From Hypanus sabinus (taxonomy: Eukaryota), in contig NC_082738.1 of the NCBI RefSeq assembly GCF_030144855.1, forward strand, positions 5,270,001-5,334,000: DNA of 64,000 nt. Direction: 5' to 3'. The position numbers were made by a program, and so were the translations under genes. Under the pieces are notes generated by a model. That model did not search any database, was not told the origin of the DNA, and saw only the letters and a list, made by a program, of their open reading frames with translations. This document shows, in pieces, positions 45,256 through 46,391 of the stretch; within the stretch, counting starts at the first letter, position 1, and each line of letters begins with the position of its first letter.

Positions 45256-45690
45256 CTGCCCGGACGAGTTCCCACGAGTAATAATGGAGCAGAGGGTGGA
45301 GTCGAGTGTATGGAAGAGGTGGCGGGGAAGAACAGAAGACAAGGAAGGGAAGGGAGAAAGAGCAGAGGAACGGGGGGGGGGGGGGGGGTAGAAAAATGGT
45401 TGGAGAGAGAGGCAGAGGGATGGGACAGAAAGATAGGAATAGGGAATTAGGGAGAGAGAGGGTGCAAGAGAGGTGTACAGAGGAAGATGTGTATTGAGAT
45501 AGAAAAGGATACAGCAGGATTATGAAGCAGATGAAAGTTTAGAAATAGTCATACAAACAGGAAAGTAAGAGAGAGAGCGCAATGGATTACAAAGGGAAGG
45601 AAAAAAGAGTATGTGAAAGGCAGGGAGCAGGGAGGGAAACAGAGAAGAGCAAAGGTCAGAAAGTGAGTGTTGCAAAAGGCAGTTTGCAGC
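45256..45690 (-). promoter_or_regulatory. Extended polypyrimidine tract / AG-exclusion zone with distant branch point for the FMNL1 alpha exon
   Basis: No CT dinucleotide seen on the plus strand (no AG on minus) between 45258 and 45689. Minus-strand CTGAC (45655-45659) and CTCAC (45663-45667) lie at its 5' end. Confidence 0.7.
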
Positions 45691-46391
45691 TAAACAGAAT
45701 CAGCAGTTAGCAAGAAGGATTCAAACTGATTCTCACACTACAAGTTTGAAGCAATAGTTGTTTCCCAGCAACGGCAAGCAGAGGACTATGTTTGGGAAGG
45801 TGATATACATGCCTTCTTCACGTTATCTGGCAGTGGCCATAACGTCACCATGGTGATCATGGTGAAAGTGACATGCCCCTGCTTGGCCAGCTGTCTTTTG
45901 AAAACTATTATTTTGTAATCATCAATATATTTAGACATTGTTCTAAATTTTGGATGTGAGTCCACCCGCCTAATGGTTTAATGAGATTATACAGCAAGGA
46001 AGAGATCATGGGATCACTTATCACTTGGTTAATTATTCAGCTTAATATTAATTCCATCTAGCATCTTTACTCAGATCAATACACACTGGGATACCTAAAA
46101 ACTTGCTAAAACACCTTTTATAAGAATAGTCTGTGTTCAAGTTTCTGAACTCATAGCCTTGAGGGGAGTTCCATTGTCCCAAGACTGCTTGGCTCACAAA
46201 CTGGCTAAATTAAATTGTGTTATTACAGCTATAAATCCATCTAATTTCCAGAAAATGTGTCCAGACTATAAAACAACAAAAGTGATTAAGATAAACAAAT
46301 TGCTACCTTTCCTTCCCTTCCTGTTCTCATCCTCCCACCACAGTTTTTAGAGGAATTGTAAATGATATTTTTCTGTACCACTTTCTACCTA

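What the first reader, a model, noticed from the sequence alone, without database searches (positions are those of the whole stretch)
45256..45691. About 430-nt AG-exclusion zone and distant branch point ahead of the alternative alpha exon
Seen: by manual reading there is no AG dinucleotide on the minus strand from the acceptor (45256-45257) back to 45690-45691. The sequence just before the acceptor is a poor pyrimidine tract (aactcgtccgggcag). At the far 5' end are CTCAC and a consensus CTGAC (branch A at about 45656, roughly 400 nt upstream), followed by a long CU-rich tract; a second CTAAT candidate lies at about 45446-45450. Established: long AG-exclusion zones mark distant-branch-point exons, which are usually regulated, often by PTBP binding to the CU tract. 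Inference: this region controls the FMNL1 alpha/beta tail choice, and its length is at the extreme end of what I recall for such exons.
Basis: partly seen in the sequence, partly recalled or inferred. Interest (0 to 1): 0.72.

Follow-up and report, generated by a model that had tools for sequence, protein, structure and literature searches.

The report
Long AG-free tract before FMNL1 alpha exon
A 434-base pyrimidine-rich stretch with no AG lies directly before the optional exon that gives a stingray's FMNL1 actin regulator its alternative tail, and gar and bonefish keep the same arrangement without any sequence similarity, so it is most likely a selected splicing-control region with a far-upstream branch point: a new example of a known kind.

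Summary
On the minus strand there is no AG between 45691/45690 and the acceptor 45257/45256. That 434 nt spacing is the longest AG-free run on either strand of the window; the next is 184.

The tract is 79% C+T, and AG in particular is missing: 0 seen against 4.6 expected, while GA is 4 against 4.6.

The exon behind it (45255-45143) is the penultimate cassette exon of FMNL1. It carries its own stop codon and encodes the "alpha" tail. RefSeq isoforms of the red stingray carry exactly this tail or the "beta" tail.

The same exon is preceded by AG-free zones of:
- 498 nt in gar and 336 nt in bonefish, each the longest in its locus, with no alignable sequence;
- 75-121 nt in a cichlid, a turtle, a fox and a vole.

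Other FMNL1 acceptors have 11-111 nt.

A published branch-site matrix finds nothing usable within 45 nt of the stingray acceptor. Strong sites lie at -192, -401 and -445/-452.

Verdict: a real, conserved 3' splice site of the distant-branch-point type, and a new member of a known class.

The parts
47981..48106 (-). Upstream constitutive exon (the DAD-region exon, ending ...GAIEDIIT). Its last base is 47980 and the 5' splice site GT is at 47979-47978.
   Evidence: tblastn to stingray FMNL1 proteins, 98-100% identity.
45256..47979 (-). Intron of 2724 nt between the DAD exon and the alpha exon. Its last 434 nt are the AG-free zone.
45699..45712 (-). TGCTAAC (branch A 45707, -452) and TGCTGAT (branch A 45700, -445), just upstream of the boundary AG. 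That AG lies only 9 and 16 nt downstream of these adenines, so it could be bypassed.
   Evidence: 6.80 and 6.84 bits with the Gooding Table 2 matrix. The bypass rule for AGs closer than 12-15 nt is quoted from PMC1431707.
45690..45691 (-). First AG upstream of the acceptor, marking the 5' boundary of the AG-exclusion zone.
45655..45669 (-). CACTCAC (A 45664, -409) and TTCTGAC (A 45656, -401). The latter is the best-scoring branch-site candidate and is followed by 90% pyrimidines.
   Evidence: 5.07 and 7.56 bits.
45258..45689 (-). AG-exclusion zone and extended CU-rich tract: 432 nt, 79% pyrimidine, predicted unstructured as RNA, with 31 PTB-type YUCUYY/YYUCUY motif starts.
45446..45452 (-). 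CCCTAAT (A 45447, -192), the nearest strong branch-site candidate to the acceptor.
   Evidence: 6.82 bits; next 30 nt 87% Y.
45372..45388 (-). Uninterrupted run of 17 C inside the zone.
45278..45284 (-). TTATTAC (A 45279, -24), the only branch-site-like motif at the conventional distance. It scores poorly and is followed by a purine-interrupted tract.
   Evidence: -0.26 bits; downstream Y fraction 0.43.
45259..45273 (-). Two GGG runs (45273-45271 and 45261-45259) separating the pyrimidine tract from the 3' AG.
   Evidence: G runs sit at the same place in gar and bonefish.
45256..45257 (-). Acceptor AG of the alpha exon.
   Evidence: The junction gives ...DIIT-A-LKTVPF, identical to RefSeq isoforms X2/X5 of Hemitrygon akajei.
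45143..45255 (-). Alpha cassette exon, 113 nt, phase 1. It encodes the tail LKTVPFTARTGKRSSRLLYDASFNDESPP. The stop TAG is at 45166-45164, 21 nt before the exon end, and the 5' splice site GT is at 45142-45141 (TAG|GTAACT).
34749..34852 (-). Coding part of the terminal beta exon (DLRNQPYRRADAMRRSVRKR...SL, then stop). Its acceptor AG is at 34854-34853, with an ordinary adjacent pyrimidine tract and an AG-free zone of 49 nt.

Best explanation
The tract is the extended 3' splice-site region of FMNL1's alternative penultimate exon.

Shown:
- The exon is a 113-nt cassette with its own stop codon. Including it gives the alpha tail; skipping it joins the DAD exon to the terminal exon and gives the beta tail.
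- The exon is preceded by a 434-nt pyrimidine-rich zone from which AG specifically is missing.
- This feature is kept, without any sequence similarity, in gar and bonefish, and in shorter form in a cichlid, a turtle and two mammals.

Inferred:
- U2 snRNP pairs with one or more branch sites far upstream, somewhere between about -145 and -452. The best candidates are TTCTGAC at -401, CCCTAAT at -192 and TGCTGAT/TGCTAAC at -445/-452.
- U2AF binds the pyrimidine tract next to the branch, and the second step takes the first AG downstream. Any AG arising in between would become a wrong acceptor and is removed by selection.
- The long single-stranded CU-rich RNA, and the GGG runs that separate it from the AG, make the site weak. 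They offer a platform for repressors of the PTB type and the hnRNP H/F type, which would set the alpha/beta ratio.
For: - AG-free spacing of 434 nt, unique in the window.
- AG is 0 against 4.6 expected, while GA is 4 against 4.6.
- The other CT-rich tracts of the window are not comparably AG-depleted: 0.8 to 1.8 times the expected number.
- Orthologous zones of 498 nt (gar) and 336 nt (bonefish), each the longest AG-free run on either strand of its locus and each with shuffle P = 0.0004.
- Over the three fish, 0 AG against 17.4 expected and 21 GA against 17.4 expected.
- Only the exon aligns between species.
- All other FMNL1 acceptors have zones of 11-111 nt.
- The far halves of the zones stay AG-free, P about 0.06, 0.005 and 0.005.
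- With the Gooding Table 2 matrix, the best site within 45 nt of the acceptor scores -0.26 bits in the stingray. The cichlid has no adenine there at all, the turtle scores 0.52, the fox -0.21 and the bonefish 0.28.
- Strong sites at the 5' end of the zone are followed by 87-90% pyrimidine.
- The RNA is predicted unstructured, z = -0.44.
- Both tails are annotated in Hemitrygon and Narcine.
Against: - There is no RNA evidence.
- Most of the AG-free length follows from 79% pyrimidine content. In the stingray alone the extra depletion is modest (P = 0.005, and only about 0.06 for the part beyond -192).
- The zone is short (75-121 nt) in the cichlid and the amniotes, so extreme length is not required.
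- The vole has a good branch site at -15 (6.67 bits).
- Gar has marginal sites at -33 and -46 (about 3.1 bits).
- PTB-type motifs in the stingray are not above composition (31 against 25 +/- 7).
- The chimaera locus lacks the exon altogether.
- No elasmobranch orthologue could be read.
Confidence: 0.65

Rival explanations
1. The branch point is conventional: TTATTAC at -24, or another weak site within 50 nt. In this reading the CU-rich tract is an intronic silencer or enhancer platform rather than the span between branch and AG. AG is avoided only because any AG following such a strong pyrimidine tract, with its many branch-like motifs, would create a competing cryptic acceptor.
For: - A UnA-type motif exists at -24.
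- The vole has a strong site at -15, and gar has marginal ones at -33 and -46.
- Vertebrate branch sites are degenerate, so matrix scores are weak evidence (established knowledge).
- Gooding et al. estimate that only one-fifth to one-half of zones of 100 nt or more reflect distant branch points.
Against: - The -24 site scores -0.26 bits and is followed by a 43% pyrimidine stretch with two GGG runs.
- The cichlid has no adenine within 50 nt of the acceptor, and the turtle and fox have only very poor ones. A branch at 68 nt or more upstream is close to forced there.
Confidence: 0.22
2. The tract is neutral low-complexity pyrimidine-rich DNA that happens to lie before the exon, and it is AG-free by composition and chance.
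For: - The zone is 79% pyrimidine, so only 4.6 AG are expected.
- CT-rich tracts are common in this window.
- Gooding et al. describe a 369-nt zone that was due to a repeat and was not conserved in mouse.
Against: - The same position holds the longest AG-free run of the locus in three lineages separated since the origin of jawed vertebrates.
- The order-specific loss of AG but not GA: 0 against 17.4 expected, compared with 21.
- The zone is not a repeat copy or a microsatellite.
- The boundary is sharp: upstream of it the sequence returns to 45-50% pyrimidine with normal AG density.
Confidence: 0.05
3. The function is at the DNA level. A long polypurine/polypyrimidine tract could form unusual DNA structure or slow RNA polymerase II, affecting exon choice kinetically. 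In this reading AG loss is a side effect.
For: There is only the strand asymmetry of the tract. Nothing here tests this directly.
Against: It does not explain why AG is absent while GA, AA and GG are at or above expectation. It also does not explain why the zone ends exactly at the acceptor in every species.
Confidence: 0.03

Closest known systems
Distant-branch-point exons marked by AG-exclusion zones (Gooding et al. 2006, PMC1431707; e.g. alpha-tropomyosin exon 3, PTB exon 11, nPTB exon 10, GABBR1 exon 23)
   Same: - A long AG-free zone, 434 nt here against 438 for nPTB.
- Consensus-like branch sites with an adjacent pyrimidine tract at the 5' end of the zone.
- Normal AG density upstream of the zone.
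- No good branch site near the acceptor.
- An alternatively spliced exon.
- A zone conserved in orthologues without alignable sequence, as reported for GABBR1 and Fugu PTB.
   Different: No branch has been mapped here. The pyrimidine tract fills the whole zone rather than only its 5' part, so several branch sites between -145 and -452 are possible. The length varies about six-fold between vertebrate lineages.
3' splice sites with G tracts between the pyrimidine tract and the AG (REPAG; Nguyen and Xie 2019, PMC6339879)
   Same: GGG runs lie at -6..-4 and -18..-16 in the stingray. G runs lie at the same place in gar and bonefish. The paper links such sites with fewer branch motifs between -24 and -4, with more distant branch points and with alternative exons.
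   Different: The G runs are absent from the cichlid, turtle, fox and vole acceptors. Binding of hnRNP H/F was not tested.
Mammalian FMNL1 alpha/beta/gamma and FMNL2 YHY/ITM tail isoforms (PMC11527432, PMC5006604)
   Same: The same exon logic applies: the TVPFTAR-type tail comes from the penultimate exon, and the DLRNQPY...RRSxR tail comes from the last exon. The latter carries the PKC-type serine that FMNL1-beta needs for its function. The stingray beta tail keeps RRSVRKR.
   Different: In mammals the intron before the alpha exon is only about 170-265 nt, with an AG-free zone of 83-100 nt. Its retention gives the gamma isoform. In the stingray the intron is 2724 nt and is not an open frame.
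PTBP1-repressed cassette exons, including an NMD-stimulating exon of mouse Fmnl3 (PMC11188260)
   Same: Dense YUCUYY/YYUCUY motifs lie next to a cassette exon of an FMNL-family gene.
   Different: The paper calls its Fmnl3 exon previously unidentified and NMD-stimulating, so it is probably a different exon; its position in the gene was not checked. Here the stop lies 21 nt from the junction, so NMD is not expected. PTBP binding was not tested, and the motif count in the stingray is not above composition.

Membership tests
Distant-branch-point (dBP) exon class, Gooding et al. 2006 | AG-exclusion zone of at least 100-150 nt upstream of the acceptor | tested here: met
   434 nt. In the human set, 838 of 67,334 introns reach 100 nt and 165 reach 150 nt.
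Distant-branch-point (dBP) exon class, Gooding et al. 2006 | High-scoring branch-site motif with an adjacent pyrimidine tract towards the 5' end of the zone | tested here: met
   TTCTGAC at -401 scores 7.56 bits with 90% Y downstream. CACTCAC at -409 scores 5.07 bits. TGCTGAT and TGCTAAC at -445 and -452 score 6.8 bits.
Distant-branch-point (dBP) exon class, Gooding et al. 2006 | No good branch site or pyrimidine tract at the conventional place (within about 40 nt) | tested here: met
   The best site within 45 nt is TTATTAC at -24, at -0.26 bits, and the last 30 nt are 43-46% Y with two GGG runs. A matrix score cannot exclude a degenerate site.
Distant-branch-point (dBP) exon class, Gooding et al. 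2006 | AG density normal upstream of the zone | tested here: met
   The 500 nt upstream hold 32 AG against 30.6 expected, at 49% Y.
Distant-branch-point (dBP) exon class, Gooding et al. 2006 | Large zone conserved in orthologues | tested here: met
   Gar 498, bonefish 336, turtle 121, vole 100, fox 83, cichlid 75, against 11-111 for other FMNL1 acceptors. The extreme length is seen only in the three non-percomorph fish lineages.
Distant-branch-point (dBP) exon class, Gooding et al. 2006 | Branch nucleotide mapped far upstream (lariat, primer extension, or mutation in a minigene) | not testable with these tools
Distant-branch-point (dBP) exon class, Gooding et al. 2006 | Exon alternatively spliced | tested here: inconclusive
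   RefSeq models of Hemitrygon akajei (X2/X5 alpha, X1/X3/X4 beta) and of Narcine bancroftii carry both tails. No reads from this animal were examined.
PTB-repressed exon | Clusters of UCUU/CUCUCU-type motifs in the flanking intron | tested here: inconclusive
   There are 31 motif starts in 432 nt, but shuffles of the same composition give 25 +/- 7. Gar (42 against 25) and bonefish (22 against 9.5) do exceed composition.
PTB-repressed exon | PTB binding, or a splicing change when PTB is depleted | not testable with these tools
   No CLIP or knock-down data for this species are reachable.
REPAG 3' splice site (Nguyen and Xie 2019) | G tract between the pyrimidine tract and the 3' AG | tested here: met
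   GGG at 45273-45271 and at 45261-45259. Gar has ccgggccccag and bonefish has ctggggcag.
FMNL1 alpha-tail exon | Encodes the TVPFTARTGKR-type tail in phase with the DAD exon, lies between the DAD exon and the DLRNQPY terminal exon, and has a 5' splice site shortly after the stop | tested here: met
   The tail is identical to Hemitrygon X2/X5 and Narcine X2. The exon order and the AG|GTAAC or AG|GTACC donor 6-27 nt after the stop are shared with gar, turtle, fox and vole.

The most novel reading that the evidence does not exclude
The far-upstream-branch architecture of the FMNL1 alpha-tail exon was already present in the common ancestor of jawed vertebrates, about 450 million years ago by general knowledge. 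It would have been maintained purely as a compositional rule (a CU-rich tract, no AG, G runs next to the acceptor) while every base turned over, and then shortened independently in amniotes and percomorphs. That would make it one of the oldest distant-branch-point exons known. It would also be a natural series, from 75 to 498 nt, for asking how branch-to-AG distance tunes a switch between a PKC-regulated and an unregulated formin tail.
Probability: 0.3. Interest if true: 0.55.

Novelty: new member of a known kind. Interest (0 to 1): 0.42.

Why it matters
The two FMNL1 tails differ in the autoinhibitory and phosphorylation region. In human T cells only the beta tail carries the serine needed for centrosome polarisation and exosome release (PMC11527432). 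How cells choose between the tails is not described in any paper I found.

A conserved AG-free, CU-rich zone before the alpha exon points to the cis-element that makes that choice. It predicts that single-base changes creating an AG in the zone would mis-splice the tail. It also adds a deeply conserved, sequence-divergent example to the small set of distant-branch-point exons. The finding remains a prediction from sequence.

Tried and rejected
- **RNA evidence.** There are no junction or lariat data.
- **Elasmobranch orthologues.** The Hemitrygon and Heterodontus genes span 221 kb and 244 kb, so no DNA was returned.
- **Search with the alpha-exon ORF.** A protein search with the stop-to-stop ORF around the alpha exon found only bird read-through fragments.
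- **Paralogues FMNL2 and FMNL3.** The only FMNL2 model reachable ends at a contig end before the tail exons. One FMNL3-like model and the owl FMNL1 protein were not on record. The vole "FMNL3" proved to be FMNL1, judged by its tails and its neighbouring gene.
- **Chimaera.** The alpha exon is absent, so no comparison was possible.
- **Repeat hypotheses.** A dispersed repeat or a microsatellite was rejected.
- **RNA structure.** No structure bringing the branch and the AG together was found.
- **Earlier literature.** FMNL is not in the supplementary lists of Gooding et al. The branch-point atlas of Taggart et al. has no supplementary files held.
- **My first branch-site score.** My home-made scoring rated the -24 site as moderate. 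I replaced it with the published matrix, which rates it poor.

Full report
**Observation.** Read on the minus strand, the window has an AG at 45691-45690 and the next at 45257-45256, with none between. This 434-nt spacing is the longest AG-free run on either strand of the 64 kb window. The next are 184 nt on the minus strand and 149 nt on the plus strand, and the 99.9th percentile of AG-to-AG gaps on the gene strand is about 130 nt. The last 30 nt before the acceptor are a poor pyrimidine tract, interrupted by GGG at 45273-45271 and at 45261-45259.

**Is it more than composition?** The 432 nt between the two AGs are 40% C, 39% T, 13% A and 8% G. Only 4.6 AG are expected, and mononucleotide shuffles give none in 0.5% of trials. 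The depletion depends on the order of the two bases. GA occurs 4 times against 4.6 expected, AA 11 against 7.0, and GG 4 against 3.0. The five separate other CT-rich tracts of the window, on either strand, carry AG at 0.8 to 1.8 times the mononucleotide expectation. The zone is not a microsatellite (only a C17 run and two trivial two-copy matches). It has no other copy in the window. As RNA it is predicted to be essentially unpaired (z = -0.44). Immediately upstream of 45691 the sequence returns to 49% pyrimidine, with 32 AG in 500 nt.

**What the exon is.** The minus strand carries the 3' part of a formin gene whose exons are 93-100% identical to FMNL1 of the stingrays Hypanus sabinus and Hemitrygon akajei.
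- The exon that ends ...GAIEDIIT stops at 47980, with GT at 47979-47978.
- The acceptor at 45256 opens a 113-nt exon, 45255-45143. In phase 1 it reads A-LKTVPFTARTGKRSSRLLYDASFNDESPP, then TAG at 45166-45164. A donor TAG|GTAACT follows at 45142-45141.
- About 10.3 kb further on, an ordinary acceptor at 34854-34853 opens the terminal exon, DLRNQPYRRADAMRRSVRKR...SL.

Including the 113-nt exon therefore gives the "alpha" tail. Its stop lies only 21 nt before the last junction, so by the usual 50-55 nt rule no nonsense-mediated decay is expected (an inference). Skipping it gives the "beta" tail. RefSeq models of Hemitrygon akajei carry exactly these two tails (X2/X5 alpha; X1/X3/X4 beta), and so do those of Narcine bancroftii. 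In mammals the same pair is known as FMNL1 alpha and beta. Gamma is a retention of the intron before the alpha exon, and the beta tail holds the serine required for FMNL1-beta function in T cells. FMNL2 has the homologous YHY and ITM tails.

**Comparison with orthologues.** I fetched genomic loci for FMNL1 from seven other vertebrates.

| Species | AG-free zone before the alpha exon | Notes |
|---|---|---|
| Gar | 498 nt | 77% Y; AG 0 against 6.3; shuffle P = 0.0004 |
| Bonefish (Albula) | 336 nt | 70% Y; AG 0 against 6.5; shuffle P = 0.0004 |
| Turtle | 121 nt | |
| Vole | 100 nt | |
| Fox | 83 nt | |
| Cichlid | 75 nt | |

The seventh locus, from the chimaera Callorhinchus, is dealt with under limits below.

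- In stingray, gar and bonefish this zone is the longest AG-free run on either strand of the whole locus: 434 against 184, 498 against 141, and 336 against 198.
- All other FMNL1 acceptors mapped in these three species have zones of 11-111 nt, mostly 20-70.
- Only the exon aligns between the species; the zones share no alignable sequence.
- Over the three fish, AG is 0 against 17.4 expected, while GA is 21 against 17.4.
- The parts of the zones beyond the best-scoring proximal branch candidates are themselves AG-free, with P about 0.06, 0.005 and 0.005.

**Where the branch point is.** I used the branch-site weight matrix printed in Gooding et al. 2006, Table 2.
- The stingray has nothing usable near the acceptor. 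The best site within 45 nt, TTATTAC at -24, scores -0.26 bits and is followed by 43% pyrimidine.
- The nearest site of at least 3 bits is at -145.
- The strong sites are CCCTAAT at -192 (6.82 bits), TTCTGAC at -401 (7.56 bits, 90% Y downstream) and CACTCAC at -409 (5.07 bits).
- Just beyond the boundary AG lie TGCTGAT at -445 and TGCTAAC at -452 (6.8 bits each). The boundary AG is only 9 and 16 nt downstream of those two adenines. Gooding et al. note that AGs closer than 12-15 nt to the branch can be bypassed.

The lack of a conventional site recurs in other species. The cichlid has no adenine at all within 50 nt of the acceptor, and only one in its 73-nt zone. The turtle's best proximal site scores 0.52 bits, the fox's -0.21 and the bonefish's 0.28. 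Gar has only marginal sites (3.1 bits) at -33 and -46. Only the vole has a good proximal site, at -15.

In gar and bonefish the strongest motifs lie at about -99 to -191, not at the 5' end of the zone. The exact branch in the stingray is therefore open. My estimates are about 0.45 for the -401 to -452 cluster, about 0.3 for -192, and the rest for other or multiple sites.

**Mechanism.** The shown parts are the anatomy, the AG-specific depletion and its conservation. The inferred part is the classical scanning model for distant branch points. U2 pairs far upstream, U2AF binds the adjoining pyrimidine tract, and the first AG downstream becomes the acceptor, so AGs in between are selected against.

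The weak acceptor context (G runs and a non-consensus +5 in the donor) fits an exon that is easily skipped. The three lineages with very long zones all have G runs within 18 nt of the AG, and the four with short zones do not. Such G tracts have been linked to distant branch points and to alternative exons.

PTB-type motifs are abundant, at 7 per 100 nt. In the stingray that is not above what the composition gives, while in gar and bonefish it is. PTBP1 is known to repress a cassette exon of mouse Fmnl3, probably a different one; I did not check where it lies. Control by PTB is therefore plausible but untested.

**Rivals.**
- A conventional branch with the tract acting only as a regulator platform cannot be excluded, because vertebrate branch sites are degenerate. 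Gooding et al. themselves attribute only one-fifth to one-half of zones of 100 nt or more to distant branch points.
- Neutral low-complexity DNA is made very unlikely by the conservation and by the asymmetry between AG and GA.

**Comparison with what is known.** This fits the class of distant-branch-point exons on every sequence criterion. It fails none, but it lacks the defining experiment, a mapped branch. Its length is comparable to nPTB exon 10 (438) and shorter than Fugu PTB exon 11 (590). It is at the high end, but not unprecedented. FMNL genes do not appear in the text or supplementary lists of that paper. I found no paper describing the cis-control of the FMNL tail choice.

**Limits.**
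- No elasmobranch orthologue could be read, because the genes exceed 100 kb.
- No FMNL2 or FMNL3 tail region was reachable.
- Callorhinchus lacks the alpha exon in a 400-nt microsatellite-like intron.

Noticed in passing
window 45690-45712 (minus strand): TGCTAAC, then a 14-nt pyrimidine-rich stretch, then AG. This looks like a complete small 3' splice site just upstream of the zone. It could be a decoy or cryptic acceptor, or its AG may be bypassed because it lies so close to the branch motifs.
   Followed up: partly
L001:18420-18840 (Callorhinchus milii FMNL1): The chimaera gene is only 16 kb long. Its DAD exon is followed after about 400 nt of (TG)n/(CT)n-like sequence directly by the DLRNQPY exon, and no alpha-type exon was found. 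UniProt isoforms of this species read into that intron instead.
   Followed up: partly
L008:41381-41480 (Sarotherodon galilaeus): In the cichlid the alpha-type exon has no stop before a likely donor (GAAGAG|GTGATG). If the exon is spliced on, the tail reading frame continues into the next exon, unlike in the other species. The protein record is misnamed 'thyroid receptor-interacting protein 6'.
   Followed up: no
L006 (Microtus ochrogaster) and protein P0343: The record named 'Formin-like protein 3' is FMNL1. This is judged by its alpha and beta tails and by its neighbour, a fused kinase/VAD1-2/EF-hand gene model consistent, from memory of the human 17q21 gene map, with the FMNL1 neighbourhood (not checked here).
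   Followed up: partly
window 45372-45388: There is an uninterrupted run of 17 C on the transcribed strand inside the zone. It could be a binding site for poly(C)-binding proteins.
   Followed up: no
window, e.g. 12308-13913 (+), 187-605 (+), 59771-60501 (-): The FMNL1 introns hold many decayed reverse-transcriptase ORFs of LINE type, which account for much of the intron length.
   Followed up: no
window 45141-45166; gar, turtle, fox and vole loci: The donor of the alpha exon (AG|GTAAC or AG|GTACC, with C instead of G at +5) and its place 6-27 nt after the stop codon are conserved from stingray to mammals.
   Followed up: partly
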